Part shown: positions 3,463 to 62,944 of the stretch, in pieces | Layout of the letters: every line of letters starts with the position of its first letter | How positions within the stretch are numbered: position 1 is the stretch's first letter | DNA from: Octopus sinensis | Lineage: Eukaryota | Assembly: GCF_006345805.1 (NCBI RefSeq) | Contig: NC_043006.1 | Span: forward strand, 42,470,001-42,534,000 | Reading direction: 5' to 3' | DNA: 64,000 nucleotides | The notes under the pieces: model-generated | Told to the model about the DNA's origin: nothing | What the model saw: the letters and a program-made list of their open reading frames with translations, nothing else | The model's database searches: none | Position numbers and translations under genes: made by a program

Positions 3463-3495
<33 letters not shown>

Positions 3496-9108: not shown

Positions 9109-9926
9109 ATATGTATGTATGTATGAGGCCGACATTAAAGGTATTTAAAGTTACAGCCTTGTTCTGTGTATTTCTTTGTACTGTGTTCCTATCAAATGAT
9201 ATTAGAGCCTTCTGAAGGAATCAGCCTTTAGATGACTCCACAGCCCTGATTCAAACAGCCATCTGAAATACCATCAGTAGATCTGGATATATGATGGCTT
9301 CAAAATTTGGCACGATGGCAGTCATTTCGGGGAAGAGGTTAAGATGATTACATCGACCCCAATGTTCACCTGGTACTTATTTTATTGACCCCGAAAGGAT
9401 AAAAACCAAAGCTGATCTCGGTGGAATTTCAACTCAGAACAGAATGACGGACGAAATGCCGGTAAGCCCTTTTTGTCCAGTGCAGTAACGACTCTGCCAT
9501 TTCACCGCCTTAAACTAATTCATAATTTTGGTTTCAAGTTTTTGTACAAGACCAGCGGTTTCGTAGGATGATCGACTGCATCGACCCCAGTGCTCAACTG
9601 GTACTTATTTATTCGACCCCGGAAGAATGAAAAGCAGAGTCGATCTCGGCGGAATTTAAACTCTGGAATAAAAGCCACCAATAATAAAACGATGGAAATA
9701 ACTATTTCTCGCATAAGAACTGAGATTTAAGGAAAGGAGTTAGCTGTGACCATCAGTCTCAGTACTTGACCGGTTTATTATTTTGTGAAACCTGGGGAGA
9801 TGAAAGATGAAGTTGACTTAAGAATGGTTTGTATGGGCAGAAACAAATGCAGCATAGCTTGTTTCTGATGATCTAACAATTTTGCCAGTCTACCATCCTA
9901 ATTATAACAGCAACAACAACAATAAT

Positions 9927-10230
9927 AGCGTGGAAGATGTTTATAAGCCATTTAAGAAACACACAAAATCCGTTAGATTCACTTCAACATTTAAATTTAA
10001 TTTGTCAAAATATTTTCGTCGCTTTCAGACCGCGACCTGTTCACTGACAAAATCCCGTGCTACATCTTGGAATTTTGTCAGTGAACAGGTGCTGCAGCAC
10101 GGAATTTTGTCAGTGAACAGGTTGTGGTCTCAAAGCGACGAAAATATTTTGACAAATTAAATTTAAATGTTGAAGTGGATCTAACGGATTTTGTGTGTTT
10201 CTTAAATGGCATATAAACACCTTCCACGCT
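9927..10230. mobile_element. Long-TIR foldback MITE
   Basis: ~120-bp near-perfect inverted arms (AGCGTGGAAG...CACTGACAAAAT) with an internal duplicated GGAATTTTGTCAGTGAACAGGT. Confidence 0.85.
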
Positions 10231-10254
10231 GCAATTGTTTTCGTTCCAACAACA

Positions 10255-10990
10255 ATAATCTTTTCTACTAAAAGCAAAAGGTTTGAAATTTGGCGGGAGG
10301 GGACTAGTTGATTACATCAACCCCAGTGTTTCACCGATACTTAATTTATCGACCCAAAAGGATGAAAGGTAAAGTCGATTCAGCAGAATTTGAACTCAGA
10401 ACGTAGCGGCAGACGAAATACCTATTTCTATTTCTTTACTACCCACAAGGGGCTAAACACAGAGAGGAAAAACAAGGACAGACAAACGGATTAAGTCGAT
10501 TACATCAATCCCAGTGCGTAACTGGTAATTATTTAATCGACACCGAAAGGATGAAAGGCAAAGTCGACCTCGGCGGAATTTGAACTCAGAACGTAGCGGC
10601 AGACGAAATACCCATTCCTTTACTACCCACAAGGGGCTAAACACAGAGGGGACAAACAAGAACAGACAAACGGATTAAGTCGATTACATCGACCCCAGTG
10701 CGTAACTGGTACTTAATTTATCGACCCCGAAAGGATGAAAGGCAAAGTCGACCTCGGCGGAATTTGAACTCAGAACGTAGCGGCAGACGAAATACCTATT
10801 CCTTTACTACCCACAAGGGGCTAAACACAGAGGGGACAAACAAGAACAGACAAACGGATTAAGTCGATTACATCGACCCCAGTGCGTAACTGGTACTTAA
10901 TTTATCGACCCCGAAAGTATGAAAGGCAAAGTCGACCTCGGCGGAATTTGAACTCAGAACGTAGCGGCAGACGAAATACCGCTAAGCGTT
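10255..10990 (-). repeat. Tandem array of headless family B units (184-bp period)
   Basis: Anchor ACCCACAAGG at 10441, 10625 and 10809. Confidence 0.9.
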
Positions 10991-11402
10991 CCGTTGGGTA
11001 TAATAATAATATTAATAATGAGTTCAAATTTTGGCACAAAGGCAGCTACTACATAGGAGGGATTAAATCAGTTACATCGACCCTTGTGTTCAATTGGTAA
11101 TTATTTTATCGACCACGAAAAGCAAAGTCGACCTCAGAAGAATTTGAACGCAGAAAGTAAAACGGTCGAAATGCCCACAAAGCATTTTGGCCAGCGTGTT
11201 AATGATTCTGTCAGCTCACCGCCTAGGATCTAGATAGGACAAAATACAAGCACACCTTCTCGCATGGCCGCCACTTGTTACTCTTGGACACACGCACGCA
11301 AATCCTGTGCTAAGCCATGAAAGTACACTCAACGCATATATTGTATTTTTGATTGTGATACTGACGAAGTAATTCAACTACAATATGTTGCGTAATAAAG
11401 CC

Positions 11403-11452
11403 TACTACTGATGCAATGAGCAGCGGTCGGCTTTTTGAAACACGTGTATGTT
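11403..11452 (+). ncRNA. Decayed hammerhead motif
   Basis: CTGATGC (A9 changed)-AATGAGC/GCTTTTT stem II-GAAA-CACGTG-T-A. Same ACACGTGT stem III; stem I is poor. Confidence 0.55.
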
Positions 11453-11752
11453 ATATAAAAATCATACAATACCGGTTACTCTTGCTGTTTCTTTCCTTCT
11501 CTCTCTCTCTCTCTTTCTCTCTTCCATTTCTCCCTCTCTTGGTATATAAATGTGTGTGTGTAAGTATGTGTTTGGTTTGTATGTATTGGTATGTATAAGT
11601 ATGTATATATATTATATGTTTATATGTAATATATATATATATATATATATATATATCTATATATATATATATATATATACATATGTGTGTGTGTATGTAT
11701 TTATGTGTGTGAGCGTGTATGTGTTCATATAATATATATCTGTATCTATCTA

Positions 11753-11855
<103 letters not shown>

Positions 11856-12202
11856 GTACAAACACGTACATATATTAGTTGAATATCTATATATATTATG
11901 CAATATATGAATGCATGTATTTTACATGTAAATATATGTATATAAGTATGTATGTATACACAGACACACAGACACACAGACACACAGACACACACACACT
12001 CAACACACACACACATAACCGCGCACACATAGAACGCATAGACGCAGGCAAATATATTCATACTCATTGTATGCATATACGTACTCATATGAATATGTGT
12101 GTTGTGTCTATATATATATATATATATATATACGCATATATAACGCACATGCATACATATGCGCGTGTGTGTGTATGTGTATGTTTATTTAATAACGAGA
12201 CC

Positions 12203-12246
<44 letters not shown>

Positions 12247-12976
12247 CGCGTGTGTTTCATGTGTATATATATGTACTCAGAAAGAAAAGCGATATGAGAG
12301 ACGATGCGAGGACTAGAAGAAAGACAGATAAAGCAAAAAATATAGGCAATAAACTGAGATAACTGTGGAGAGCGAAGAATAAGCCAGTAAAGGAAGCATG
12401 AAAAATGAAAAAACAGAAAAGGGACAGATAGAAATATGCGATGAGATGAAAATCAACAAAAATTTCTTCCTTTGAAGCCATTCTTTAGATGTTTACGAAC
12501 CACTTATTTTATGAGGCCACATATTGCATTTTATCTGACCCCTATATTACTTTCGTTAATAGCTAAATCCCAAGTCTTTCCGATGATTCTAATCGTATTT
12601 TACAAAGTTATCAATCCTAAAGTTAGATTAGAAGCTCCTTTTGGTTTCTGTATTATACAGTGTGACGCCTTTAAACAGCTCCCGTTTTCTATGCTGCAAT
12701 CGTCGTTTCGTCATCGCCAGCATATTTATAAACTACCCCCAAAGTCCAATTTCATGTCACTGTCCTTTTATTCTGCCTTTACCAGCTTCGAAGAGGGTGT
12801 TGAATGCAAGTTTTTGCAATTTCCTATTAGCTGGTGAATCCGGACCTCATTTAGATCAGTGTTCCCCAGACAATTTTTGCTCCACAATCCGGTTTCAAGC
12901 AAGATTTCTTCCATGGACCGGGAGATCATGTGCATAAAAGAACACAAAAATGTGTATAACATATAATTTATTACAT

Positions 12977-14492: not shown

Positions 14493-14785
14493 TAGATAGA
14501 TACACCCACACACACACACACATACAAAGATAAACTGATAGATACAACTGAGTGGGCAAACAAAAGTATGAGACACTGAATAGTGCTTTTTTATGTTGAT
14601 AAGCCTAGTACTTATTCTATTAGTTTGTTCTTGTGAAACCAATAAGTTATGTGGATGTAAATAAATGAACAGCAGTGATGAGGGTGAAACACAAAGACAA
14701 AGACACACACATACACTTACATATATACATACTTATATATATACGATTGATTTGTTTCAGTTCCTGTCTACGAAATCCAAATATA

Positions 14786-15862
14786 TTGTTGTTGGAATCC
14801 TTTTTGTCTCGGGAGACAATGGAGTTGCGCATAAAATAATCTAGTCCAACTTTTACATTTCGCGTCCTAATACATCTCCTGCTGTGGCTGTGTAGTCCTA
14901 TCCTGGACGAACACTCCCTCTGGCAGGTGCCGCAAATGTAGCGAAGACTTTGCCTAGCTGGTTGTAATGTCATAGCTTCTTGTTGACGTCTTTTCTCGTC
15001 TTTCCATTTCTCCTCTCTCTCTATGTCACTTCTTTGTGTTCCCTCTTTTACGGTACGTCGCCAATCTCCACGGTTGCTGGCAACTGCTTCCCAGTTGGTA
15101 ATATTGATGTTGCAGGCATTCATGTCACTTTTGCAAACGTCCTTGTATCGTAAGAACGGTCTTCCCACAGACCTAGTGCCCCTAACAAGCTCCCGTTGAG
15201 TATGTCCTTGGGGATTCTGCCATCTTCCATATGGCTAACATGTCCAAATCATCTCATACGTCTTTGTGTGAGGAGTGCAAACATGCTTGGTATTCCTGCT
15301 TGCTTGAGGACATCTTTGTTGGGGACATGATTCTGCCATTTAATGCGAAGGATTTTCCGGAGGCAGCGCGGGTGAAAGATATTTAGGCGAAGTATGGCGT
15401 CCAAGTCTCACTTCCATACAGCAGAGTGCTAAGTACACATGCCTGGTAAATCTTCATTTTTGTGGTCTTGGTCAGCTTATTGTTGTCCCATGCCCGTTTG
15501 GAGAGTTGGGCAATCATAGCAGCTGCCTTGCCAATGCGTATATTGAGCTCAGCATCAAGGGATAGGTTGTAGGTGACAGTAGAGCCAAGATAGGTAAATG
15601 TCTCCACCTCCTGTAGTATGTGGTCTCCAATATGTATGTTTGGGATGTCCAATGTAGCCTGACCCATGATGTTGGTCTTCTTGAGGCTGATAACTAAGCC
15701 AAAGTTGCCACATGTTTGCTCAAAACAGTTGATGAGCCTTTGTAGGGCTTCTTCTGTGTGTGATACCAGAGTGGCACCATCAGCAAATAGCATCTCCTTG
15801 ATCAGGACGCTTCTGATTTTGGTCTTGGCACGTAGACGCGAGAGATTGAACAATTTCCCAGT
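14786..15862 (-). mobile_element. 5'-truncated RTE (BovB-like) LINE, C-terminal RT region, frameshifted
   Basis: GKLFNLSRLRAKTK, EMLFADG (FADD mutated), FTYLGS, LLYGSETW, FHPRCLRKIL, RRMR*FGHV, RIGLHSHSRRC; 3' end GTCTCCCGAGAC...(CAA)n. Confidence 0.93.
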
Positions 15863-16951
15863 ACTTGTATACATGTATAGGACATGTTAGCACAAAGCCC
15901 CAAAATAACAGCAACATTGATAATCAAAGCAGTCTATTGTGGGCCACTAACCTGATCATTGATTCACTTTGAAGGGTATGCATTTGTAATCCAGGAACAG
16001 GAAATAGCAACCAAATTCCTGATGCGCAAAAAGGACAAAGGTGCAGGAAAAATGCCAAATGTGTTAACCTCTGCAGACCTTGTGGAGTGAACACCGAATA
16101 TATAACCCACATCATAAGAGGTTGCCAAAATTGTCATCATGTTATCATCTGTCGATGAGATATGATGTTGTAGCCAAGTCACGGTACGATGAAATCTGTT
16201 GAATGAATGATCCAGAGGCCATAGAAGCCGTAGAATCTACTGGTTTCACATTTTTGGCACTAGGTCAGTCATATCGGAGGGTGGGGGGTGGGGGGACAAT
16301 TACATCGACCCCCCCCCCTCCATCCCAGTAATCGACTGGTACTTATTTTAACGACCCCGAAAGAATGAAATGCAAAGTTGATCTCGGCGGAATTTGAACC
16401 CAGAACGTAAAGACGGGCGAAATGCTACGAAGCATGTTGCCTCGTAGGATAATAATTCTGCCATCTTGCCACCATTAAACAATAATTGATATTATGAAAT
16501 GGAAAAGCAGCAAGCTGGCCGAATCGTTAGCACGTCGGGCAAGATGCTTGGCCGCGTTTCGTCCGTCTTTACATTCTGAGTTCAATTTCAACCCTGGTTG
16601 ACTTTGCATTTCAACCTTTCTGGGTCGATAAAATAAGTACCAGTTGAACACTGGAGTCGATGTAACCGACTAAGCTCTTTCTCCTGAGCATGCTGGTCTC
16701 ACACCAAAATTTGAAACCAATATTATGAAGAGGGAAAGCGGTGAGCTGGCCGAATCGCTAGCACACCGGGCAAAATGCTAAGCGGCATCGCGTTTGTATT
16801 TACGTTCTGAGTTCAAATTCCGTCGAGGTCGACTCTGCCTTTTATCCTTTCGGGGTCGATAAAATAAGTCCCAGTTGCGCACTGGGTGGTGTAATCGACT
16901 ACCCTTTCCCACAAAATTTTAGGCTTGTAACTTATAGTAGAAAGGAATACA

Positions 16952-17911: not shown

Positions 17912-18074
17912 TATACGACAGGCTTCTTTCAGTTCCGTCTACCAATCCACTCACAAGTATTGGTCGGCCCGGTTATAGCAGAAGACACTTGCCCAAGATG
18001 CCACGCAGTGGGACTGAACCCGGAACCATGTGGTTAGTTAGCAAGCTACTTACCACACAGCCACTCCTGCGCCT
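17632..18074 (-). mobile_element. SINE family A, near full length
   Basis: Same head, body, microsatellite and tail. Further copies lie at ~3940-4310(-), 14590-14785(-), 24725-25270(-), 27152-27785(+), 31660-32640(-), 34905-35470(-), 36135-36480(+), 44690-44880(-). Confidence 0.9.
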
Positions 18075-21289: not shown

Positions 21290-21728
21290 TACTCTCTCTT
21301 TACTCTTTTACTTGTTTCAGTCATTTGACTGCGGCCATGCTGGAGCACCGCCTTTAATCGAGCAACTCGATCCTGGGACTTATTCTTTTGTAAGCCCAGT
21401 ACTTATTCATTTGTAAGCCCAGTACTTATTCTATCGGTTTCTTTTGCCGAACCGCTAAGTAACGGGGACATAAACACACCAGCATCGGTTGTCAAGCAAT
21501 GCTAGGGGGACAAACACAGACAAACAAACACACACACGCATATATATATATATATATATACATATATACGACGGGCTTCTTTTAGTTTCCGTCTACCAAA
21601 TCCACTTACAAGGCTTTGGTCGGCCCGAGGCTATAGTAGAAGACACTTGCCCAAGGTGCCACGCAGTGGGACTGAACCCGGAACCATGTGGTTGGTAAAC
21701 AAGCTACTTACCACACAGCCACTCCTAG
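21290..21728 (-). mobile_element. SINE family A, near full length
   Basis: Same family, with an internal duplication of TTGTAAGCCCAGTACTTATTC. Confidence 0.9.
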
Positions 21729-25135: not shown

Positions 25136-25954
25136 CATACACTACAGGCTTCTACACAGTTTCCTCCCAATGAAATCCACTCACAAGGCTTTGGTCGGCC
25201 AAGGGCTATAGTAGAAGATACATGTTGAAGGGGCTGTGAAACCATGGAGTTGCAATGGGACCTTCTTAACCACATATTATTTAATGTTGATTTGCTTCTT
25301 ATTTATAGTGGAAAGATTGCTTTTGGCTGCTAGAAATTGCAGCCAAAAGACCGCCTCTAAATGATACATTAGAGAACGAACGCTTTTGTTTAGGTATGAA
25401 ATGAGTTAAACATCAAAAGCAATCTCTCTACAAGAAATAAAGAGGCAAATCCGCGTAAAGGCTTATGCCGTGATTCAAACGAGGATTTTCGCTGCTATTT
25501 CTCGCTGCTCAAAGAAACGTATAGATGCTTCTGTTTTGGTTTGTGTACAAGTAACGTACCGCTAAAGAATTTATCTTTCCGTATCATATTTAGAGCAAGT
25601 CAGCTTAGTGCCTGACATCCATCTTTCACCAAGTTGAACTCTAAGCAGCCAAACTTACTCTATTTCTTATCGTTTAGGAGATTCGGGTCAGAGACTCTTA
25701 ACCTTTTGTACCTCGACGTCTCCTTTCATCGAATGGCGTTTAAAAAAAAAACAAAAGCAAAATCAGATTATTTTAATCAGACACTCATTTAGGCGCAGGC
25801 GTGAATGTATGGTTAGTAGCTTGCTTCCCAACCACATGGCTCCAGGTTCAGTACCACTGCGTGGTACCTTGGGCAAGTGTTTTCTGCTATAGCTTCGGGC
25901 CGACCAAAGCCTTGTGTCAGTGGATTTGGTAGACGGAAATTAAAAGGAGCCCGT

Positions 25955-26008
<54 letters not shown>

Positions 26009-35261: not shown

Positions 35262-35727
35262 CTGAAAGAATCCCGTTTTATATATATATATATTATATAT
35301 ATAAATATAAATATTCAACGGGCTTCTTTCAGTTTCCGTCTATCAAATCCATTCGTAAGGTTATGGTCAGTACAAGGCTATAGCAGAAGACACTTGCCAA
35401 AGGGGTCACGCAGTGAGAGTGAACCCGGAACCATGTTGTAGGAAGCAGGCTTCCTAGCACCACCCCTCCACACAGTAATTCAAAATGAATGGCGCAAAAA
35501 AAAAGTATATATGTCAGTGCTGTAATGAATATATTGCAAAAATATCGATGGAACATGAAAGGTTAACTCTTCAAGTTTCTACCGACAGCCATATATGTCC
35601 GATGTTGGCGCCCTTTGCCACACGTCTACAGGATAAATCTAGTTCTTGTCACGCCCGTGCCAGCATAGCCTCGTGAGTTGACCATCTTTGTTTTTGTACC
35701 ATTGTGTGTGTATGTGTGTGTGTGTGT

Positions 35728-36001: not shown

Positions 36002-36135
36002 CACAACGGGCTTCTTTCAGTTTCCGTCTACCAAATCCACTCACAAGGCTTTGGTCAGCCTGAGGCTATAGTAGAAATCACTGGCCCAAGGCACCACGCA
36101 GTGGGACTGAACCTTGAACCATGTGGTTGGTAAGT
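35728..36135 (-). mobile_element. SINE family A
   Basis: Same family; head-to-head with a + copy at ~36135-36480. Confidence 0.85.
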
Positions 36136-37541: not shown

Positions 37542-39257
37542 ATGAAATCGGTTGATATAGATACTAAAGATGGAATGAAGGTTATTGTGTTCGCGTTCGA
37601 TAGAGTTTGTTTTGAAACTATGGTATTCCCTCATACTGTCGGTCATGAGTGCATGGCTTTTGCTATCCACCAACTTGGAATAACAGATGCAAGATATTTT
37701 GGTTTCCGTCACGTCACTAATGACGTGAGAGTTGAATGGATTGATTTGAACAAGCCTTTGGGGACCCAACTCGACAAACATTGTAGTCAACATTGTTTTT
37801 ATTTTGGAGTGATGTACTATATATCGCGTGCTTATAACATTAAGGATGAGGCTGCCCTGTATCAGTATTTCAGGCAACTTCATGTTGATTATTTATATAG
37901 TCAGTATGATTGTTTACTTGAAAGGGCTATCAAACTGGCTTCGTTTTACCTTCGAGTGATTCTAGGTCCATACGATCCCAAAACGCATACTGTTACGACA
38001 GTGGGCCGCCACCTTCTTTTTCCTGCTAGCATACGGAGGGACGAGAAAATTGCTACAGCTGCTCAAGAAAAAGCTTTTCAGAATTACCAAACCCTTCATA
38101 TATCTTCTACAACTAGTATGGTTTTTTATATAATTGAATTCGAGTCTGCGACGTACTACGGCCTAGAGTGTCACCCTGCCATACTTTCCGAGAGTCGTGA
38201 GGCGGTGCATCTAATAACGTCCTACAACGGTATCATGGTGAAATATTTAAGGTCCCCTGATGCTTTTCTCCTCAAGTGGTCAGATATTGCCGCAGTCACA
38301 CGTTCTCAAAAGTCTAGTATAATTATCCAACAGTTATCTCGCTCCATACAACTAGAACTGGCTGATAAGAAGAGAGCAAAATATTTCTTCCAAATGGCTT
38401 TCCTTTTGATGCATTTTTATCAAGATAATCCAGAGTTCTGCGACAGATCGACAAAGGAACCTGCCAAGCCTGACGGCTACGAATCTTACTCGTTGCTGCT
38501 GTCAAGTTCTCAGTCGGAGACTCTGAGATCTGTTCTTCGTTACCAGCAGTCGCTGACTTCTATTCCTGATAACGTTCGATCGTCTCCCAAATCTCTTTAT
38601 GAAGCTACTGAAACTGCGCAATACCTCCTCGCTCAACCGTCACGTCCAGAACAAACTGCTCTAGGTGCAACAGAAGCAATTACTAGTCCATCGAAACCCT
38701 TAACGAGCGTCAGCGCTGCTGAGATACGTCTTGATGAAGAATTATTCCTGACTGGTTCCAAGGATATAAAATATGAAGCGAAGAAACTTAACAAAAGTAG
38801 TCAAACGCAATCTTTTTACATATCTATGATTAATGAACGATTCCAGAAGTATACCGAAACCAGTCCGATGCATTTACTTTCTCAAACTTTAAAAAATATT
38901 CTGCAGTATCTAGATGCAATAGAAAAGGCTGAAGGTGAAACCCAAGCGGATATTAAATCTAAACAAAGTACGGAAAAACATTTCTCCGATTCGCAACCAT
39001 TGAAAGAAAGTGGCATTCCTTATAGATATCCACCCAAATATCCATTTCCAAAAACCAAGTCGAAGGATACGGACATAGATCCTGCGAAACCTATTACCGT
39101 AGGGCAAATTTTGAAGAGAGTTCAAGACATTCAAGTACGAGATAAAAGCACTGAGTCCGTTTCACCCGCTAAATTGGAGAAAAGTAAGGAGTCGAAAGTT
39201 TCTGAAACTCAAACCATGTTGCCTAGTAGGAAGTACACATATCTGAACCACCGGTAA
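37542..39257 (+). CDS. Pez/PTPN14-like: FERM domain plus linker of a Pez/PTPN14/PTPN21-family tyrosine phosphatase (5' ORF, intronless)
   Basis: 571-aa ORF with Kozak-like GCCACAATG (37536-37544). N-terminal ~295 aa align by eye with the PTPN14/21 FERM domain (RYFGF, WIDLNKPL..QLDKH, FYFGVMYY, YQYFRQL, LFP, YYGLE, KWSDI, AKYF, HFYQDN). PPKY (PPxY) at 39030-39041. Confidence 0.9.
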   Translation: MKSVDIDTKDGMKVIVFAFDRVCFETMVFPHTVGHECMAFAIHQLGITDARYFGFRHVTNDVRVEWIDLNKPLGTQLDKHCSQHCFYFGVMYYISRAYNIKDEAALYQYFRQLHVDYLYSQYDCLLERAIKLASFYLRVILGPYDPKTHTVTTVGRHLLFPASIRRDEKIATAAQEKAFQNYQTLHISSTTSMVFYIIEFESATYYGLECHPAILSESREAVHLITSYNGIMVKYLRSPDAFLLKWSDIAAVTRSQKSSIIIQQLSRSIQLELADKKRAKYFFQMAFLLMHFYQDNPEFCDRSTKEPAKPDGYESYSLLLSSSQSETLRSVLRYQQSLTSIPDNVRSSPKSLYEATETAQYLLAQPSRPEQTALGATEAITSPSKPLTSVSAAEIRLDEELFLTGSKDIKYEAKKLNKSSQTQSFYISMINERFQKYTETSPMHLLSQTLKNILQYLDAIEKAEGETQADIKSKQSTEKHFSDSQPLKESGIPYRYPPKYPFPKTKSKDTDIDPAKPITVGQILKRVQDIQVRDKSTESVSPAKLEKSKESKVSETQTMLPSRKYTYLNHR

Positions 39258-40288
39258 CTGAGCCAACTTATCAAGCCCTCTCTAAATCGGAGTTGTTGGC
39301 CCTAGAAAGTTCTAAAGGAGCTGTACATAAGCATTCCAAGAAGCCATTTATTATGGTGGCTTCAGGTGCATTTAAAGACATTCGAAGTAGAGATAAATAT
39401 GAAAATCTGCAACGTAAATTAAATGAGGGCGAGGTTTTCACCGAGTTTCGCTCAACTGGCGTAAAAAGTCAAATGCCTTGTTCTGTTGGTTGTCATGTAG
39501 ATAACCTTTCTCGAAATCGCTATCAATCTATTGTACCTTATGACGAAAATCGTGTACAACTGTCTGGAAGACCTGACAATATGCTTGGTTATATAAATGC
39601 GTCTAGTATAAAATGGAGACGCGGTCTGCATAAATTGAGCTTCATTGCAGCTCAAGCGCCGCTAAAAAATACTGTCGAAGATTTTTGGCAAATGATTTGG
39701 GAACAAAAGGTTTCTATAATAATTATGCTGAATGCCAGGGATGACGAGGATAAACTTTTGTGTTGTCAGTACTGGCCTCAAGAATGGAATCTTGATCAAA
39801 AATTTCAGAGTGGACCGTTTACAGTTACTTTCCATACGTATAGGAGAACTCCCGAGTACTTTTTAGATGTTCTGACAATCACCAATGCTTCTGGTGAGCA
39901 ACAGCTAATAAGTAATCTTTATTTCACTCAATGGTCAGGAGATGACTGTCCGTGTGATTTATCAATTTTTGTCAGCATTTTGGAAGAGATTGACTCTGTA
40001 CAAAATCTTATGCGCACTAAAGATCCCGTCCAAGCTCCTATCGCTGTCCTGTGTCATGATGGAGTTGGTCGTACCGGTGTCCTAATAATGTCTTATATTA
40101 TGAAATATTGTCTAAAGCATGACATTGAAATGAATATATCACACTTGCTTGGCTTCCTCCGCTCCAATAGAATGTTTATGGTTACTTCACTAAAACAATA
40201 TATTTCCGTTCATGAAGCTTTGATTTATTTCCTGAAAGGCTTATTTGCTCCTTCAAAATCGTATCTCGTTGGTCCATTTAGGATCTAG
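39230..40288 (+). CDS. Pez/PTPN14-like: PTP domain of the same Pez/PTPN14/21-like gene (-1 frame relative to the 5' ORF; frame open from 39230)
   Basis: LQRKLNEGEVFTEF, NRYQSIVPYDENRVQL, GYINAS, FIAAQAPL..TVEDFWQMIWEQ, QYWP, VLCHDGVGRTGVLI (Cys at 40052), LRSNRMFMV..LKQY. These match the PTPN14/21 phosphatase domain. AATAAA follows at 40381. Confidence 0.9.
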   Translation, partial: EVHISEPPVTEPTYQALSKSELLALESSKGAVHKHSKKPFIMVASGAFKDIRSRDKYENLQRKLNEGEVFTEFRSTGVKSQMPCSVGCHVDNLSRNRYQSIVPYDENRVQLSGRPDNMLGYINASSIKWRRGLHKLSFIAAQAPLKNTVEDFWQMIWEQKVSIIIMLNARDDEDKLLCCQYWPQEWNLDQKFQSGPFTVTFHTYRRTPEYFLDVLTITNASGEQQLISNLYFTQWSGDDCPCDLSIFVSILEEIDSVQNLMRTKDPVQAPIAVLCHDGVGRTGVLIMSYIMKYCLKHDIEMNISHLLGFLRSNRMFMVTSLKQYISVHEALIYFLKGLFAPSKSYLVGPFRI

Positions 40289-54040: not shown

Positions 54041-55027
54041 GTAGAAGATAGGGAAATTTCAAGTTTCGTTTATTTCTCAAGAATATTTAACCTGTTTTGA
54101 AACGAAGTGGGTTCTAACCAGAAATCGAAACCGTATCGTAGAGTCGTCGCACTACTTGTTTTAATGGTGTGTGCCTTTTTCTTATCAAGATATAGAAACA
54201 GAGGCAGCCATCGGGTTGAAATCTATGCAATCATATCCCGCCTCCCTCTTCATAACTAGGCATTTAGAATCAAATTACATACGTGAAGTAGTGGTGGTGG
54301 TGATAGTAGATCTTTGCACACACTCATATATTTATATAACTAAGAGAGGCAGCAATGGTGTGAGTGAGTCAGTCGGTGATAAGAAACCTAAGTGGAGTGT
54401 ACGTGGTTCTTAGCCATACAAATGCACTTTTCTGACTGCCGCGTCTCCGCTGAAACTGACAGAGTCTAACTTGATCGCCGACTACATTCACCCATGCGTG
54501 GTTTACAGACGTTCATACATAAATGCGTGCGTGCGGATTAATTAGTTGATATCACTACCACTAACACCAACAACAAAAATATTTTTTGTTGAATTTTTTT
54601 TCTTAATTCGTTCTTTCTTTAAATATTTTGTGATATCCAAAAAAAAAAAAAAGAAGTAAGAAAGCAAAATATTGTGGATAAAAACGTTATAGCTTGTTGC
54701 AGCCCATTTACAATTTAAAGGAAGATTTTAAAAAGATCTCACGAAGGAAAAGTTTAACTTTCAGCATTAAACTAAACAACGATATCTACGACAGAAATAT
54801 AAAAGGATAAATTTTGAAGAAAAAAACAACAACAAAAAAAAAACCAAAAAAACCCAAACAAAGAGAACGAAAAAAAAAACAAGAACAAAAAATTTTAAAA
54901 AAACATAAATAACAAAACTACCATTTTAAATTTTGGAATCTTGTACACAGACTTTCGTGACAACGCCTTGAGAATTTATCGGTATTTCTGTAAAATTTAT
55001 TATCATTACTACTGTTATTATTAATTG

Positions 55028-55075
<48 letters not shown>

Positions 55076-55533
55076 TGTTGGTGTTGCTGTTATGAATATT
55101 TTTCTCACCAAAATTATTTCACTCTCATAATCGAAACTTAATTTTTTTTTTGTATCATTTTTTCTGTCTCTATTGAACATAAAACTTTTTGACTTTATCA
55201 ATTAACACCGTTTCGTTTCTCTAGACACCCTGTGGCCACTGCAGAAACAGTTATATTTATATAGATTGCTTTCGACAAATCATTATTATTGATTTAATTT
55301 AGTGTCCTTTTGTATGTATTGCATCAAGTCCCTTGGCAAGATTCTTAAATCTACTTGCGCAGAAGAGCCCTGTGTCATTAAGAAATTATCCTTTTTATAT
55401 CGAATATTATTTATAAAATACTTTTTGTGTGAAGACATTTAGAAAACAAAAAAAAAAGAAAAAAACATTGATTTATGAAATAACGATAATAATAATAATA
55501 ATAACATCAATTAAATTTTATAAATAACATAAA

Positions 55534-56952
55534 ATGGATATGGATAACGAATTTGTGAACAATGTTAAAACTGAGACCGAGGTAAATGATGAGAAGTCTA
55601 GGACAAATCTAGAAGGGTACAACCAGGATATTTCTGTTAAGTCAACCGTGATTGGACAACCAAGTACGACAATGGAAATCAATGGAAATGTTTCCACTGA
55701 AGCCTGCCAACTGCAGGACACACTGTATACAGAAAGTAATACAACAGACACTTCATATCCGAATGCCCTGTCTAATGTTGAATCTAATTCCTTACAATCG
55801 GCTTTGAACGAAGCGATGGATTCGCAAATTTATGTTCCTGTAGTTAACAACACTTTCAGCGAATTAGCTGATGGAAGCAACAGTGATGGGGTTAGTTTTA
55901 AACCAGAAAATATCGAAGAAGTAAAACTTATGAATACATCGTCGGCGAAATGTGACACAGAATCTGGTGAGGTCATTCAGGATGCCATTTTAATAGATCA
56001 GAAACAAAGTTCAGTAGAGTTGTCTGAAAATATTTTTCCTGTAGTAACTGATACACACGTGCTTAATTCTGAGGAATCACAGGAAGATATCACAGGAAAT
56101 CTTACTAACTTATCAGAAGGTGATTTGAATTTCTGCACTGGCGTCGAAGGTGTATGTGGTTCATACACCGAAACAGAAGTTGCTCCTGATTATATCCAAG
56201 TTTCGACTCAGAAAGTAGCAGAGTTTTCTACAGAACCTAACTTATCAGAAGGTGATTTGAATTTCCGCACTGGCGTCGAAGGTGTATGTGGTTCATACAC
56301 CGAAACAGAAGTTGCTCCTGATTATATCCATGTTTCGTCTCAGAAAGTAGCAGAGTTTTCTACAGAACCTACATGTGAAAAAGTTGAAGAACTCGAAGAG
56401 AATCTGAAAAATATTTCAACATCTGCATCATCTTGTTTTGAAGAAATAGGAAATGTTGAAAATGTTAATTCCGAAATAATTGAAAAACCGTCCGTATTTT
56501 CTGTTGGAGATGCCGATAGCTCACAGGAAATCCTTGAAGAGAAACCTGAAGTCGTTTCTTTTAATCAATTTACATTAAAAACTGAAACAATTGGAGGAGA
56601 CAAAATATTAGAAGAGAGAACAACTGTGGAAATAACTGAAGAATTAGATGTGCAAAACGCAACTGTAAACAATATGACAGTATCAGAACACATTGAGATT
56701 GTCGAGAAAGGAAACGTGGAAACCGATGGTAATATTGTTGGGACACCCAAAGATAATGATTCTACCGTTTTATTTGAACAAGTTGACGTACAGGTCGAAG
56801 AATTTGGAATTTCTACTTCATCAAAACCGATGATGACTTCTATCGAACAATCTGAAAATTTTAAGATGAATATTCCAAATGAAACGGAAACATCGTTTCC
56901 CGAGAAATGTCTTCCGTCCAGGAAGATAGTGGTTTGCTTGAAAACATGGTAG
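55534..56952 (+). CDS. Acidic, Glu/Thr/Asn/Val-rich, probably disordered protein (5' ORF of an unknown intronless gene)
   Basis: 472-aa uninterrupted non-microsatellite ORF in AT-rich DNA. It contains a 44-aa tandem duplication and overlaps the next ORF, which has the same composition. Confidence 0.8.
   Translation: MDMDNEFVNNVKTETEVNDEKSRTNLEGYNQDISVKSTVIGQPSTTMEINGNVSTEACQLQDTLYTESNTTDTSYPNALSNVESNSLQSALNEAMDSQIYVPVVNNTFSELADGSNSDGVSFKPENIEEVKLMNTSSAKCDTESGEVIQDAILIDQKQSSVELSENIFPVVTDTHVLNSEESQEDITGNLTNLSEGDLNFCTGVEGVCGSYTETEVAPDYIQVSTQKVAEFSTEPNLSEGDLNFRTGVEGVCGSYTETEVAPDYIHVSSQKVAEFSTEPTCEKVEELEENLKNISTSASSCFEEIGNVENVNSEIIEKPSVFSVGDADSSQEILEEKPEVVSFNQFTLKTETIGGDKILEERTTVEITEELDVQNATVNNMTVSEHIEIVEKGNVETDGNIVGTPKDNDSTVLFEQVDVQVEEFGISTSSKPMMTSIEQSENFKMNIPNETETSFPEKCLPSRKIVVCLKTW
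56107..56370 (+). repeat. In-frame 132-bp (44-aa) tandem duplication inside the acidic ORF
   Basis: NLSEGDLNF(C/R)TGVEGVCGSYTETEVAPDYI(Q/H)VS(T/S)QKVAEFSTEP x2. Units start at 56107 and 56239. Confidence 0.95.
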
Positions 56953-57995
56953 CTGTTGCACCTTTGGTAGAAAACCAAACGGTTGTAGTTCAAAAGGAAG
57001 AAATGTTATTGTTGGAAAATGAAGACAATAATGTTGTTGATATGACAGTAAAAGGGGAAAAACTTATAGAAACGATTGTGAATGAACCGGCTGAAGAAAG
57101 TTCTAAAGAACCAATGGGAAGTCCCAAAATTGCCACAGAACTCTCAAAAGTCCAGGAAGAAAATAAAGTGAAAGTAACAGAATTTGAAGCTGTAGAAAAC
57201 CACGTTCCAACAAAGAAATTAACTGATATACAAAGTCATGATATAAAAACCTTTTCTATGGCAGATAAAAATACGATGGAAACACCAACATATATTGGAG
57301 CTGAAGTTTCTTCGGACGAAAACATCGACGCATTTTCAGCGAAACCAAATCAAACTACGAAACTCGATTCTCTAGAAATAGAAACGAATGTGACTACCAA
57401 AGATGCTGACAGACGAGAGAAGAAACCAGAGCACATTGTATCGAGTGAACGAAAGCAAATTCCAGTTACAATGACAGAAAATAATCGTCCAAGACATATT
57501 GACATTCTAAGGTCGATCAGAGGAAAGACTAAACGCGAGGCGAAAATGATTATGTCACAGGATGCATTTAATAGAGCTTCAGAAATATTGAAAATTGTTC
57601 AAAACAAATCGAATACATATGAAGATGGTATCTATGTTCACCCCATGCACCGGGCCTATGCCACAGAAATAAAAGACGGTAATATAAATCTTTTGAAATA
57701 TACAAGGCTTAGTGATGGTCAGTTATCAGATGATTCCAATCATTACGAGTATTTGAAGTCATTCAGAAGCCAGAACCGTAATGACTATATCAACATGAAA
57801 ATCAATGGGAGGAAACGGCGTAAAATGGTTGGTCGATTCATCTACGAATGCTGTAACAAAATTACTTTGCTGGAAAATATAGCCATAAATTACATTGATG
57901 GTAATAAACAGAATCAAAACCCTTCAAACTTATCGATTCAGATCGAATATGGCGGAGGAGAAAAACACAAAAAGAACACAAAGAAAACAAAGTAA
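56883..57995 (+). CDS. 3' ORF: acidic region followed by a degenerate HNH_3-like endonuclease fold (~57624-57941) and a basic tail
   Basis: Frame open from 56883, ATG at 56907. The C-terminus YVHPMHRAYATEIKDGNI...KMVGRFIYECCN...AINYIDGNKQNQNPSNL resembles the HNH_3 pattern VHR(L/F)vwEcF.G...idHidgnk.nN...NL. AATAAA at 58034. Confidence 0.75.
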   Translation, partial: NGNIVSREMSSVQEDSGLLENMVAVAPLVENQTVVVQKEEMLLLENEDNNVVDMTVKGEKLIETIVNEPAEESSKEPMGSPKIATELSKVQEENKVKVTEFEAVENHVPTKKLTDIQSHDIKTFSMADKNTMETPTYIGAEVSSDENIDAFSAKPNQTTKLDSLEIETNVTTKDADRREKKPEHIVSSERKQIPVTMTENNRPRHIDILRSIRGKTKREAKMIMSQDAFNRASEILKIVQNKSNTYEDGIYVHPMHRAYATEIKDGNINLLKYTRLSDGQLSDDSNHYEYLKSFRSQNRNDYINMKINGRKRRKMVGRFIYECCNKITLLENIAINYIDGNKQNQNPSNLSIQIEYGGGEKHKKNTKKTK

Positions 57996-58912
57996 ACGAC
58001 ACAAGTTTTTTTTCAGAAGAGATGCCATACTAAAATAAACAACAACAAATCGATATGGTATTGCTGGGCTGCTGCTGTTGTTAGTGAAGCTGGCCGTAGT
58101 GGTGATGGTGGCGGTGGTGATGATGTTGGTGGTGATGGTGGTGCTGTTGATGTAGGTGGACATTGTGCACATAGTAGAAGAGAGATTGATTCGCCTTTCA
58201 ATGCATATTAAGTCAGATGCTTTACGTATTTCAGTTCCATTCGACTTCGCCTTACATCCCAGCTGGTTCGATCATATTAACTATCAGTATCATACAGATC
58301 GATTCGGTCAACTAAAATGCCTTGCCCACCACCATTTAAAACAAAATGACATTGCACTTCTTTAAAAGAAAACGCCTTCATCATCATCATCACCATCATT
58401 ATGAGGAGATAGATAAAAGTTCGGAAACAATCTTTTACAACTTTTTACATCCCAAATTATTATTCGACTACAGACTATTCCGTAGATAATTACAAGTTTT
58501 AATTCTGCACCATTTGTCTCCTCCAGTCAAACGACGGAGCCAAGTCCTAGTGCGATCCTACAATCTCTCGACATAAAACCTGTATACATTTCAAAGTTAA
58601 CAAAACTACGGAACACATTTTTAAAATCAATTTTTTTTCTTATGCCACCATTACCTTTTTATTATGCAAACACACAAACGAACAGTATACAATTACAAAT
58701 TGAGTACACAAAACTGCTCTCTTTCACTCTCTTTCATTCACCCACTTACACAAATACAGACACGCCCTTATATATATATATATATATGTATATATCACCG
58801 TGATCACCGTGTCCGACCAGGCTATCGGATGTTGCTACACATCGCTGGTCACAATGCGCTTCACATTGTTTTAGCCTTCAAATGACGCCACCCCCGCTGG
58901 CTAAGCGAGCAG

Positions 58913-58970
<58 letters not shown>

Positions 58971-61902: not shown

Positions 61903-62944
61903 TATTAGTATTTAAATGATATCAATTTTAAAAATTACCCTCCATAAGGGAGAGAGAAACCGGAAGTGTAATGGATAATTGCATGTCTTTTCCAAACATC
62001 TATTGACGTAAATGATCGAATTTGTTATTGCTGTTGTTGTTTAGCCACAGGTCAACTCTGATCGAACAGATATATAATCGAAAGCATTCCAGCAATGACT
62101 ATCCCATCTTATTAGGTATATACTAGATAAAATTACCTGTGTCAGTTCCTTTTGTAATACGTAGGATGTGTTTTGAGGGAGATTTCTAGCGAGTTGAGAA
62201 ACCACGTCGAGGTTTCCTCGTTGTCTCGGCTTAACGGAGTATACTTCTTTCTCCATTTAGTTCGCCCTATCTTCAAACGGAATGTGTTAAAGATCTCTTA
62301 AATAAAAAATGCTGAATCAAGTATAAAAAAATTCTATTTTGAAGTCCTGTTTCTGAAGACATATCCTGGAATAAAATTACCTAAGAGACCAAGAAGCCGA
62401 CAACCAATTCTTTCTTCTTTTCTTGTTGAGAGAAGATAGCATTTTAATTAAGATAGTTTTTGTATATTTTTAACTTAGTTTCCCCGTAGAATTAAGCTAA
62501 GATATACCAATAGATTTTGAAGTATAAAAACAAATAACAAGAAAGATATCGAAGAAAGAGTACTGTTGACACTGAAATAAAATCTGGCTGCGTGCCACAA
62601 CAACTTAAAATAACTCTGATTCACGTGTAGCTAAGACGAAAGTATCTGGCTGTAAAAGTGAAGGATGCAATTTAATAAATCGTTAAATATATGTTTAGCC
62701 GCAGCTAGGTAAATTATTGGTAGTTAGGAAATAGCCATTGCGCTGCTTGTATGTATGTTAATTTGTAATATCAGCGCTTGTGACACTAATGGTAGGGTAG
62801 AAGCAACAGGCGAGTTTGAAATAGCCAACTACTTATAAATTAGATGTTTTCTTTGTTTTTGATTTTTCCATGACATTTTCTAGTCATCTATCCCAACTCC
62901 CTATTAAATAAATATGATGTGCGTGCGTGCGCGCGCGCGCGCGC

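What the first reader, a model, noticed from the sequence alone, without database searches (positions are those of the whole stretch)
55534..57995. Unknown intronless ~820-aa gene: acidic disordered region fused to a catalytically dead HNH-like fold
The last ~120 aa follow the pattern of HNH_3-type endonucleases known from phages, large DNA viruses and Polinton-like elements. The N-terminal YVHP..RAYA...DGNI segment is followed by VGRFIYECCN...INYIDGNKQNQNPSNL. The His of VHR is Gly, the catalytic His of (D/N)H is Tyr, and the distal metal-binding Asn after NL is absent, so nuclease activity is unlikely while the fold and basic patches (RKRRK, KHKKNTKKTK; possible NLS) remain. About 650 aa of acidic low-complexity sequence precede it. 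No other viral or Polinton genes flank it. Inference: a domesticated mobile-element nuclease repurposed as a nuclear nucleic-acid- or chromatin-binding protein, potentially a lineage-specific gene family.
Basis: partly seen in the sequence, partly recalled or inferred. Interest (0 to 1): 0.8.

Follow-up and report, generated by a model that had tools for sequence, protein, structure and literature searches.

The report
Octopod gene with dead HNH domain
This is a single-exon gene found so far only in octopods: a long acidic, probably unstructured region followed by a small basic domain descended from a phage-type HNH homing endonuclease that has lost its catalytic residues. It is a likely case of a mobile-element nuclease recruited as a non-cutting binding module, although the copy in this assembly carries one frameshift.

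Summary
The window is Octopus sinensis chromosome CM016868.1 (GCA_006345805.1).

**What is there.** Region 55534-57995 (+) is coding, but it is not one ORF. It is two overlapping ORFs in different frames, so there is one frame change. Orthologues carry a single uninterrupted ORF:
- an unidentified Octopus-like species, 772 aa, about 80% aa identity;
- Argonauta hians, 796 aa, annotated as a hypothetical protein. It is a single-exon gene in the same neighbourhood.

**Selection.** The C-terminal 197 aa give dN/dS 0.27-0.36. The acidic part is more relaxed, at 0.43-0.84.

**The HNH call holds.**
- phrog_959 (HNH endonuclease) matches at E 2.5e-6 in the window copy and at E <= 0.01 in both orthologues.
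- hhalign against I-HmuI-like sequences gives 96.8% probability, E 2.8e-10.
- The Pfam HNH_3 match is below threshold.

**Catalytic residues.** The catalytic His column is an invariant Tyr. The "VHR" His is Gly. The helix Asn that binds the metal is missing, and only 15-20 poorly conserved residues follow the NL motif.

**Not settled.** The fold could not be tested because the AlphaFold models were poor. No viral genes flank the gene and there is no second copy in the window. The neighbouring FERM-phosphatase gene also has one frame change here, so an assembly indel is as likely as a real lesion. Function (non-catalytic nucleic-acid binding, nuclear) is inferred only. No expression data were available.

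The parts
55534..57995 (+). Whole single-exon gene, an octopod-specific 'hypothetical protein'. In this assembly it is interrupted by one frame change and has no other stops.
   Evidence: ORF listing and three-frame translation. Uninterrupted orthologous ORFs of 772/750 aa (L002/L001) and 796 aa (Argonauta hians GAB1603394.1, L003:10001-12391) cover both window ORFs.
55534..57401 (+). Acidic, low-complexity, probably disordered N-terminal region of about 620 codons. It has no recognisable domain.
   Evidence: D+E 19-20%, K+R 5-9%, net charge about -83, pI 4.0-4.4. The same composition is seen in the orthologues, net -71 and -87. No Pfam hit. dN/dS is 0.43-0.84.
56105..56368 (+). In-frame tandem duplication, 2 x 132 nt (44 aa each), 97-98% identical. 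It is specific to the window species.
   Evidence: the repeat finder family D4 and TRF. The Octopus sp. contigs L001/L002 carry one copy, shown by overlapping blastn HSPs.
57402..57995 (+). Conserved basic C-terminal region of 197 aa. It comprises a predicted helical segment (about 57492-57608), a beta-rich segment, and the HNH_3-like core.
   Evidence: 89% aa identity to the Octopus sp. orthologue and 59% to Argonauta, against about 35% for the acidic part. dN/dS is 0.27 [0.16-0.43] and 0.36 [0.18-0.73]. Net charge +15, pI 9.8.
57738..57950 (+). Degenerate HNH_3 / I-HmuI-like core (71 aa). This is the region with statistically supported homology to phage HNH homing endonucleases.
   Evidence: hhalign A2 vs A4 covers columns 113-183 at 96.8% probability, E 2.8e-10. 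A2 vs P0005 gives 96.4%, E 1.2e-9. phrog_959 covers residues 98-185 at E 2.5e-6. P0005 matches PDB 1u3e (I-HmuI) at E 1.7e-10. Coordinates checked.
57807..57824 (+). GRKRRK basic loop before the 'V-G-R' strand. It is invariant in all three orthologues and is a candidate nuclear-localisation or backbone-contact patch (inference).
   Evidence: Invariant columns G136-K141. Coordinates checked.
57888..57893 (+). Asn-Tyr at the columns of I-HmuI D74-H75, the metal ligand and the catalytic general base. The Tyr is invariant in the three octopods.
   Evidence: Alignments A3 and A4 and hhalign. Invariant N163 and Y164. Residue numbering comes from the 1u3e alignment and PMC12724721.
58034..58039 (+). 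AATAAA, a candidate polyadenylation signal 39 nt after the stop. A counterpart lies 31 nt after the stop in the Octopus sp. contigs.
   Evidence: Pattern search and sequence. Its function was not tested.

Best explanation
A lineage-restricted, single-exon host gene seen so far only in incirrate octopods (Octopus sinensis, a second Octopus-like species, Argonauta hians).

Its last ~70 aa of recognisable motif, within a conserved basic ~190-aa C-terminal region, descend from an I-HmuI-type (Pfam HNH_3; His-Me finger group 2) homing-endonuclease domain. That kind of domain is carried by phages and other mobile elements.

The domain has lost the general-base His (now an invariant Tyr) and the helix Asn that holds the metal. 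It has probably also lost most of the alpha-helix, so it should not cut DNA by the His-Me mechanism.

What selection has kept is a basic beta-hairpin/sheet module (DGN...N...NL, an invariant GRKRRK loop) joined to about 600-640 aa of strongly acidic, fast-evolving, probably disordered sequence.

Most likely mode of action (inferred, not shown): the inert nuclease remnant works as a nucleic-acid-binding module, most likely for DNA, in the nucleus. The acidic region would either engage basic partners such as histones or fold back on the basic domain to regulate binding. This would be the same kind of exaptation as the Smad MH1 domain.

In this particular assembly the gene carries one frame change. 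That is about as likely to be an assembly indel as a very recent or polymorphic lesion.
For: Real, conserved gene:
- Uninterrupted orthologous ORFs of 772/750 aa and 796 aa.
- Argonauta's is a single-exon CDS in the same neighbourhood, with an intronless FERM-phosphatase ORF upstream in both species.
- Single copy in the window.
- dN/dS is 0.27 [0.16-0.43] and 0.36 [0.18-0.73] in the C-terminal region and 0.43-0.47 in the upstream acidic ORF.
- The ORF has stayed open across dS of about 1.
- Against the Octopus sp. copy, 7 of 11 alignment gaps in the CDS are multiples of 3, and the four that are not largely cancel one another. In the flanks the counts are 4 of 9 and 5 of 19.
- The charge split is conserved: N-part net -71 to -87, C-part +13 to +15.

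HNH origin:
- phrog_959 matches all three orthologues, best E 2.5e-6.
- hhalign gives 96.4-96.8% probability, E about 1e-9 to 3e-10, to canonical members. One of these matches I-HmuI (1u3e) at E 1.7e-10.
- All weak tblastn hits in phages are HNH endonucleases, including ones sitting in ribonucleotide-reductase genes.

Loss of catalysis:
- Columns for I-HmuI D74/H75/N96 (PMC12724721) read Asn/Tyr/absent. The 'VHR' His is Gly.

Precedent:
- Inactive His-Me fingers that kept DNA or ligand binding are known, namely Smad MH1 and ENPP (PMC5714182).

Frame change possibly artefactual:
- The window lineage shows no excess amino-acid change. Unique changes are 2 vs 6 in the C-terminal region, and 14 vs 19 and 10 vs 16 elsewhere.
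- The neighbouring FERM-phosphatase gene also has exactly one frame change here, while it is one ORF in O. bimaculoides and Argonauta.
Against: - No expression evidence of any kind. The two Logan contigs end in microsatellites and are colinear with the genome, so they look like genomic reads.
- No structural support. The AlphaFold models reached pLDDT 37 and 47, and Foldseek gave nothing at E <= 0.001.
- Pfam HNH_3 is below its gathering score, and a profile search of PDB sequences gave nothing.
- Overall CDS identity to the Octopus sp. copy (88.7%) is no higher than that of the flanks (88.0-88.5%). The middle acidic stretch has dN/dS 0.84, with a bootstrap interval that includes 1. Constraint is therefore modest.
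- DNA binding, nuclear location and any role of the acidic region are untested inferences.
- The frame change may be real, in which case this species' copy is a young pseudogene.
Confidence: 0.6

Rival explanations
1. The window copy is a genuine, recently inactivated pseudogene. The gene is functional in other octopods but dead, or polymorphically dead, in O. sinensis.
For: One frame change separates two ORFs in the deposited sequence. Neither ORF is on record as a called gene, whereas the neighbour's ORFs are. Constraint on much of the protein is weak.
Against: There is no excess of lineage-specific amino-acid changes, no further stops or frameshifts, and both frames stay open end to end. 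The adjacent, clearly conserved FERM-phosphatase gene shows the same kind of single frame change in this assembly while being intact in two other species. That points to assembly indels.
Confidence: 0.4
2. The domain is still an enzyme. The Tyr at the His position, or another residue, supports a variant nuclease, nickase or covalent-intermediate chemistry, so the protein is a lineage-specific nuclease rather than an inert binder.
For: The Tyr is invariant in three species across dS of about 1. A Tyr nucleophile is documented in one His-Me finger group, PacI (PMC5714182). Asn at the D74 column also occurs in canonical phage members.
Against: PacI's Tyr sits in the omega-loop, not at the His column. 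The metal-binding Asn and the helix that carries it have no counterpart, and the tail after NL is short and unconserved. Phage relatives with Phe, Tyr or Pro at the same column also exist, so loss is recurrent in this family.
Confidence: 0.07
3. It is a fragment of a transposable or viral element (Polinton-like, giant-virus insert, retrocopy) drifting neutrally, and the long ORFs are a leftover.
For: The nearest non-octopod relatives are all phage proteins. The window is repeat-rich and contains a LINE reverse-transcriptase fragment elsewhere. CDS and flank identities are similar.
Against: It is single copy in the window. There are no flanking element genes, terminal repeats or poly(A) remnant. 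Position is orthologous in Argonauta and Octopus. ORFs of about 770-800 codons are retained over dS of about 1, with dN/dS significantly below 1 in the domain. A pattern scan of IMG/VR found nothing.
Confidence: 0.04
4. The HNH resemblance is fortuitous. The C-terminal region is a de novo or unrelated basic domain that happens to carry a DGNxxNxxxxNL-like string.
For: Pfam HNH_3 is below threshold and covers only 19 residues. There is no PDB sequence hit, no structural confirmation, and the key catalytic residues are missing.
Against: Three independent profile or pairwise routes agree over about 70-88 residues: PHROG at E 2.5e-6, hhalign at E about 1e-9 to 3e-10, and exhaustive phmmer hits at E 1.4e-9 and 1e-4 among 1.84 billion proteins. 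All of these are to HNH_3-type proteins. The match extends to the upstream strand (Y-I-N-M-K-I-N-G ... V-x-R-F-I-x-E-C), not just the hairpin.
Confidence: 0.05

Closest known systems
I-HmuI-type HNH homing endonucleases (Pfam HNH_3, PF13392; His-Me finger group 2; PDB 1u3e)
   Same: Homologous core of about 70 aa, comprising the strand before the hairpin, the DGN turn, the N...NL motif and the overall spacing. Asn at the D74 column, as in some phage members.
   Different: - The catalytic His is Tyr, the 'VHR' His is Gly, and the metal-binding helix Asn and probably the helix itself are missing.
- There are no NUMOD, HTH or AP2 DNA-binding modules.
- It is not in a phage, intron or intein. It is a syntenic chromosomal gene of an animal.
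- It is fused to about 640 aa of acidic sequence.
- It is below Pfam's threshold.
Smad MH1 domain (His-Me finger group 16), an I-PpoI-like nuclease fold recruited as a DNA-binding domain of animal transcription factors
   Same: The same evolutionary logic. A His-Me finger lost catalysis and is kept by selection in an animal protein, where MH1 still binds DNA (PMC5714182).
   Different: It belongs to a different His-Me group and no sequence relationship was detected, with no MH1 hit in Pfam. MH1 is pan-metazoan and functionally characterised. This gene is octopod-restricted and uncharacterised, and its DNA binding is unproven.
ENPP1-3 nuclease-like domain (His-Me finger group 21)
   Same: A catalytically inactive His-Me finger retained as a binding or structural module in animal proteins (PMC5714182).
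   Different: It derives from Endonuclease_NS rather than HNH_3 and is extracellular, within a multi-domain enzyme. There is no homology signal here.
Degenerate HNH_3 modules in phages: P0003 (three repeats) and the Polaribacter phage Freya 'HNH endonuclease'
   Same: These are the best non-octopod matches (E 1.4e-9; tblastn E 0.04). They also lack the catalytic His at the same column, carrying Tyr, Phe or Pro.
   Different: They are phage-encoded with different architectures: T-rich linkers and repeats in P0003, and the distal Asn retained in Freya. Their function is unknown too.

Membership tests
HNH_3 / I-HmuI-like homing endonucleases (His-Me finger group 2) | Significant profile similarity to family members | tested here: met
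   phrog_959 'HNH endonuclease' matches at E 2.5e-6 in the window copy and at E <= 0.01 in all three orthologues. hhalign gives 96.8% probability, E 2.8e-10, against a canonical set that includes the I-HmuI fragment. Exhaustive phmmer hits P0003 and P0005.
HNH_3 / I-HmuI-like homing endonucleases (His-Me finger group 2) | Reaches Pfam HNH_3 gathering score (24.8 bits) | tested here: not met
   Scores are 11.6-14.4 bits, E 0.03-0.2, covering only profile positions 18-36 of 46.
HNH_3 / I-HmuI-like homing endonucleases (His-Me finger group 2) | Catalytic general-base His (I-HmuI H75) in the first hairpin strand | tested here: not met
   The column is Tyr in all three octopod sequences. The catalytic residue identity comes from PMC12724721.
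HNH_3 / I-HmuI-like homing endonucleases (His-Me finger group 2) | Metal-binding Asn/His at the start of the alpha-helix (I-HmuI N96) | tested here: not met
   The homology alignment ends before this column. The octopod tails are 15-20 residues long, unconserved, and have Gly or Arg at the ungapped position.
HNH_3 / I-HmuI-like homing endonucleases (His-Me finger group 2) | Acidic or polar metal ligand before the His (I-HmuI D74), the structural Asn of the 'NL' motif and the DGN turn | tested here: met
   Asn at the D74 column, as in phage members L007 and L008. DGN and S-N-L are invariant.
HNH_3 / I-HmuI-like homing endonucleases (His-Me finger group 2) | Beta-beta-alpha-metal fold | tested here: inconclusive
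   The AlphaFold2 models reached pLDDT 37.3 (single sequence) and 46.8 (3-sequence alignment), with the core region below 50. Foldseek against PDB gave no hit at E <= 0.001.
HNH_3 / I-HmuI-like homing endonucleases (His-Me finger group 2) | Accessory DNA-binding modules (NUMOD, HTH, AP2) and residence in a mobile context (phage gene, intron, intein) | tested here: not met
   There are no such Pfam domains in the window ORFs or on record for the orthologues. The locus is a syntenic chromosomal gene with no element genes nearby.
Exapted inactive His-Me finger DNA-binding domains (Smad MH1 type) | Loss of catalytic residues with the domain kept under purifying selection in a host protein | tested here: met
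   His is replaced by Tyr and the Asn is lost. dN/dS is 0.27-0.36, with bootstrap intervals below 1.
Exapted inactive His-Me finger DNA-binding domains (Smad MH1 type) | Demonstrated DNA binding and nuclear function | not testable with these tools
   Only indirect evidence is available: pI 9.8, an invariant GRKRRK loop, and the role of the homologous I-HmuI domain in DNA contact (PMC12724721).
Exapted inactive His-Me finger DNA-binding domains (Smad MH1 type) | Sequence homology to MH1 itself | tested here: not met
   There is no MH1 hit in Pfam at E <= 10. The family is analogous, not homologous at a detectable level.
Polinton-like, viral or transposable-element insertion | Neighbouring element genes, terminal repeats, multiple copies | tested here: not met
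   There is no non-repeat ORF of 90 aa or more in 41-64 kb apart from the gene. No flanking long repeats other than microsatellites. No second copy in the window. The IMG/VR scan was negative.

The most novel reading that the evidence does not exclude
An ancestor of incirrate octopods captured an I-HmuI-type homing-endonuclease gene from a phage, giant virus or other mobile element by horizontal transfer. The nuclease remnant was then exapted into a new, cephalopod-specific class of DNA-binding domain, fused to an acidic regulatory or chaperone-like region. This would be an independent, much younger parallel to Smad MH1 or plant AP2, acting as a lineage-specific chromatin or transcription factor.
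Probability: 0.25. Interest if true: 0.7.

Novelty: new variant of a known kind. Interest (0 to 1): 0.5.

Why it matters
Exaptation of inactivated His-Me finger nucleases by animals is known from very few, ancient cases (Smad MH1, the ENPP nuclease-like domain). Here the source is a different group, the phage-type HNH_3 / I-HmuI homing endonucleases. The event is young enough that the parent motif is still readable, and it is confined to one animal order known for lineage-specific gene innovation.

If the gene is expressed and nuclear, it would be a traceable example of how a selfish-element nuclease becomes a host nucleic-acid-binding module, and a candidate case of horizontal gene acquisition in cephalopods.

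If instead it proves unexpressed, it is an unusually long-lived orphan ORF.

On the practical side, two adjacent conserved genes each carry one frame change in this assembly. That is a warning about indel errors in GCA_006345805.1 for anyone calling pseudogenes from it.

Tried and rejected
- **The search for homologous proteins.** Searches with the downstream ORF and with the 3-sequence C-terminal alignment returned nothing. They missed even the 89%-identical orthologue that the exhaustive search later found. The word index evidently does not reach this family, so those negatives carry no weight.
- **PDB sequence searches.** Single-sequence and profile searches gave only chance hits or none.
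- **NCBIfam.** Nothing meaningful.
- **Structure prediction.** Both AlphaFold2 jobs gave low-confidence models. The Foldseek run on the better one returned only noise, with toxin-antitoxin and spike proteins at E > 0.1. I disregard it.
- **IMG/VR pattern scan.** No relatives.
- **Exact look-ups of the two window ORFs.** Not on record.
- **Identifying the species or library type of runs SRR11869390/94 from the literature.** This failed, so I cannot say whether those contigs are DNA or RNA. Their microsatellite ends suggest DNA.
- **A short intron across the frame change.** I considered this and rejected it. The two frames overlap by only a few dozen bases, too little for an animal intron. The orthologues read straight through the corresponding stretch as coding sequence.
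MAFFT lines up one Pro and a Tyr/Gly, but hhalign does not extend there. I treat it as unsupported.
- **The P0004 hit (E 2e-5).** This is a repeat-protein match to the basic linker only, and I ignored it.
Full report
**1. Source of the window**

A neighbouring ORF of the window is on record in NCBI assembly GCA_006345805.1, chromosome CM016868.1 (105.9 Mb). It places the window at about 42.47-42.53 Mb. That assembly is Octopus sinensis (10.1101/2023.05.16.540928). The window is 33-44% G+C, rich in microsatellites, and has no Rfam hit.

**2. Check of the observation**

The span 55534-57995 (+) is clearly coding-like. It is A-rich on the + strand (AT skew +0.21). It starts at an ATG with an in-frame stop two codons upstream, and it ends at a TAA that is followed 39 nt later by AATAAA.

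It is not one ORF. The span is 2462 nt, which is not a multiple of 3. It reads as two long ORFs in different frames that overlap by a few dozen bases, so there is exactly one frame change and no other stop. I do not give the place of the change or what would undo it. All analyses used the two ORFs separately or the intact orthologues.

A short intron cannot explain the frame change. The overlap is too small, and the orthologues read through the corresponding stretch as protein.

- The first ~637 residues have D+E 19-20%, net charge about -83 and pI about 4.
- The last 197 residues have K+R 20%, net +15 and pI 9.8.
- A perfect in-frame tandem duplication of 132 nt (44 aa, 97-98% identity) lies at 56105-56368.

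**3. Relatives**

The word-indexed protein search found nothing. The exhaustive HMMER search of 1.84 billion representatives with the last 197 aa found five proteins.

Two are full-length orthologues.
- P0001 (750 aa, 89% identity in this region) and its cluster mate P0006 (772 aa) come from Logan assemblies of runs SRR11869394 and SRR11869390.
- P0002 (796 aa, 62%) is GAB1603394.1, 'hypothetical protein Ahia01_000620700' of Argonauta hians.

P0006 starts with the same MDMDN... as the window gene and runs uninterrupted through everything encoded by both window ORFs. The 3.5-kb contigs L001 and L002 are colinear with window 55062-58787 at about 88% identity. They carry one copy of the 132-nt unit, and they end in the same (TTA)n and (TA)n microsatellites that flank the gene in the window. 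They therefore look like genomic contigs and give no evidence of expression.

In Argonauta the CDS is a single exon (L003:10001-12391). About 6 kb upstream lies a long uninterrupted ORF that ends in a tyrosine-phosphatase domain. It is orthologous to the window's FERM + phosphatase ORFs at 37542-40288. The locus is therefore syntenic between Octopus and Argonauta. No second copy exists in the window. No Pfam family is on record for any of the three orthologous products.

**4. Selection**

Nei-Gojobori estimates, computed for each window ORF separately, with 95% bootstrap intervals where computed:

| Region | vs Octopus sp. | vs Argonauta |
|---|---|---|
| Upstream acidic ORF | 0.43 [0.30-0.61] | 0.47 [0.33-0.64] |
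| Acidic part of the downstream ORF | 0.84 [0.50-1.62] | 0.53 [0.30-0.85] |
| C-terminal 197 aa | 0.36 [0.18-0.73] | 0.27 [0.16-0.43] |

- dS to Argonauta is about 0.9-1.1, yet ORFs of about 770-800 codons persist in all three taxa.
- Against the Octopus sp. copy, 7 of 11 alignment gaps in the CDS are multiples of three, and the four that are not largely cancel one another. The net difference is the 132-nt duplication plus one frame change. In the flanks most gaps are not multiples of three.
- Constraint is modest. Overall nucleotide identity of the CDS (88.7%) equals that of the flanks (88.0-88.5%).
- What is conserved in the N-part is composition. Net charge is -71, -83 and -87 in the three species, and the C-part is +13 to +15.
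- With Argonauta as outgroup, the window lineage has fewer unique amino-acid changes than the sister Octopus lineage: 2 vs 6 in the C-terminal region, and 14 vs 19 and 10 vs 16 elsewhere. There is no sign of relaxed constraint in O. sinensis.

**5. The HNH-like core**

- Pfam HNH_3 hits only 19 residues at 11.6-14.4 bits, against a gathering score of 24.8.
- PHROGs family 959 ('HNH endonuclease') matches residues 98-185 of the 197-aa segment at E 2.5e-6. It matches all three orthologues at E <= 0.01.
- The remaining exhaustive-search hits are phage-encoded HNH_3 proteins.
  - P0005 (E 1e-4) has two canonical HNH_3 domains and sits on a small phage-like contig.
  - P0003 (E 1.4e-9) has three degenerate repeats. 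It sits on an 18-kb contig with Amidase_2, family-B DNA polymerase, helicase and a topoisomerase carrying HNH_3/NUMOD domains.
- hhalign of the octopod profile against P0005 gives 96.4% probability, E 1.2e-9. The same stretch of P0005 matches I-HmuI (PDB 1u3e) at E 1.7e-10.
- Against a small canonical alignment (both P0005 domains, two phage HNH endonucleases, and the I-HmuI fragment printed), hhalign gives 96.8%, E 2.8e-10 over octopod columns 113-183. That is window 57738-57950.
- tblastn against 50,697 phage genomes gives only weak hits (E 0.02-0.1). All are to HNH endonucleases or to unannotated ORFs in homing-endonuclease positions, such as between the halves of a ribonucleotide-reductase small-subunit gene or next to nrdA.

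Homology of the core to I-HmuI-type endonucleases is therefore well supported. Only MAFFT aligns it, and hhalign stops at column 113.

**6. Active site**

The catalytic residues of I-HmuI are D74, H75 and N96 (PMC12724721). In the alignments:
- The D74 column is Asn in octopods. Asn also occurs there in canonical phage members.
- The H75 column is Tyr, invariant in all three octopods.
- The 'V-H-R' His is Gly.
- The DGN turn and the S-N-L Asn (the I-HmuI N87 column) are kept.
- The N96 column has no counterpart. The homology alignment ends before it, and only 15-20 unconserved residues remain (two or three Gly in Octopus, Arg-rich in Argonauta).

The helix of the beta-beta-alpha-metal motif is therefore probably truncated. 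Standard His-Me catalysis is very unlikely.

One caveat applies. A Tyr can act as nucleophile in one His-Me group (PacI), but from the omega-loop rather than from the His column (PMC5714182).

Loss of the His at the same column also occurs in phage relatives. It is Phe in the Polaribacter phage Freya 'HNH endonuclease', and Tyr, Phe or Pro in the three P0003 repeats.

**7. Structure**

The core region was below 50. Foldseek against the PDB gave no hit at E <= 0.001.

The only moderately confident element (pLDDT about 63-67) is a helical segment upstream of the core, at about 57492-57608. It is conserved in all three species and has no database match.

**8. Surroundings**

Between 41 kb and 64 kb there is no other ORF of 90 aa or more that is not microsatellite-derived. 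No long direct or inverted repeats bracket the gene, there is no poly(A) remnant, and no relatives were found in IMG/VR. It is not part of a recognisable viral, Polinton-like or transposable element.

**9. Is the frame change real?**

This cannot be decided here. Three points favour an artefact.
- No other lesion is present in the gene.
- The window lineage shows no acceleration.
- The adjacent FERM-phosphatase gene also has exactly one frame change in this assembly. It is one ORF in Argonauta, and the 488-aa O. bimaculoides protein P0008 aligns to the window in two abutting frames.

Two independent single-base lesions in neighbouring conserved genes are more simply explained by assembly indels. 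A real, young or polymorphic lesion remains possible. I put it near 40%.

**10. Interpretation**

Shown:
- A conserved, syntenic, single-exon, octopod-restricted gene, as far as the libraries reach.
- A C-terminal core homologous to I-HmuI-type HNH domains.
- Loss of two of the three catalytic positions.
- Purifying selection on the C-terminal region.
- A conserved acidic/basic charge split.

Inferred:
- The remnant acts as a non-catalytic nucleic-acid-binding module. The supporting points are its basic charge, the invariant GRKRRK loop, and the fact that the homologous I-HmuI domain sits in the DNA major groove (PMC12724721).
- The protein is nuclear.
- The acidic region engages basic partners or masks the basic domain.

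The closest functional analogy is the Smad MH1 domain, an inactivated His-Me finger that kept DNA binding, along with the ENPP nuclease-like domain (PMC5714182). Membership in the HNH_3 family as an enzyme fails on the catalytic His, the metal Asn, the accessory DNA-binding modules and the mobile context. Descent from that family is supported.

**11. Novelty and score**

The literature searches found no description of an HNH-derived gene in octopus or of the Argonauta protein. The only annotation is 'hypothetical protein'. The His-Me classification lists just 28 eukaryotic sequences in the I-HmuI/HNH_3 group.

I rate it a new variant of a known kind: an exapted dead His-Me finger, from a different source family, in a new lineage and with a new architecture. 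Interest is moderate (0.5). The origin story is solid and uncommon, but expression, structure and function are all open, and the copy in this window is not intact as deposited.

Noticed in passing
window 37542-40288 (+): A single-exon FERM (FERM_N, FERM_M) + tyrosine-phosphatase gene. In this assembly it is split into two ORFs by one frame change. In Argonauta it is one long ORF (L003:2-4111). The 488-aa O. bimaculoides protein P0008 (85% identity) aligns to the window in two abutting frames. Together with the finding's gene, this suggests indel errors in the assembly.
   Followed up: partly
window 14647-15874 (-): Two ORFs. One has a sub-threshold RVT_1 (reverse transcriptase) hit at 28.8 bits against a cutoff of 29.6, which points to a LINE-type retroelement fragment.
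   Followed up: partly
window about 3486-3598, 4148-4218, 17913-18007, 21566-21665, 25858-25955, 35313-35401, 36003-36100; L003 7760-7852, 17526-17606, 20990-21092: A dispersed repeat of about 90 nt. It occurs many times in the window in both orientations and also in the Argonauta locus at 75-85% identity. It is probably a SINE- or MITE-like element shared across octopods.
   Followed up: no
window 62575-62833; L003 14577-14858: A block of about 260-280 nt downstream of the gene is conserved between O. sinensis and Argonauta (68% identity) in the same relative order. It has no open frame in either species, so it may be a conserved non-coding element or an old repeat.
   Followed up: partly
L004 5429-7270 (P0003) and 9689-12706: A phage-like metagenomic contig. 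It encodes a 613-aa protein with three degenerate HNH_3-like repeats joined by Thr-rich linkers, none of which has the catalytic His. It also encodes a 1005-aa product that combines HNH_3/NUMOD hits with topoisomerase IV / gyrase A domains, which looks like an endonuclease fused to or inserted in a topoisomerase gene.
   Followed up: partly
L006 346-969 (Polaribacter phage Freya_1 'HNH endonuclease'): This annotated phage HNH endonuclease has Phe at the catalytic His column and Gln at the 'VHR' His, but keeps the distal Asn. The annotation may therefore name an inactive protein.
   Followed up: no
window 54997-55073, 58091-58159, 58916-58970: Microsatellites bracket the gene: (TTA)25 upstream, a GGT/GAT-rich 15-27-nt-period array just after the 3' end, and (AT)28 downstream. 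The short-read contigs of the sister species break at the counterparts of the (TTA)n array and of a short (TA)n run at about 58775-58800.
   Followed up: no
tools (vs 23): The word-indexed protein search missed the 89%- and 62%-identical orthologues that the exhaustive search found. The two window ORFs are not on record as called genes, although the neighbour's ORFs are. Negative results from the indexed search should not be read as absence.
   Followed up: yes
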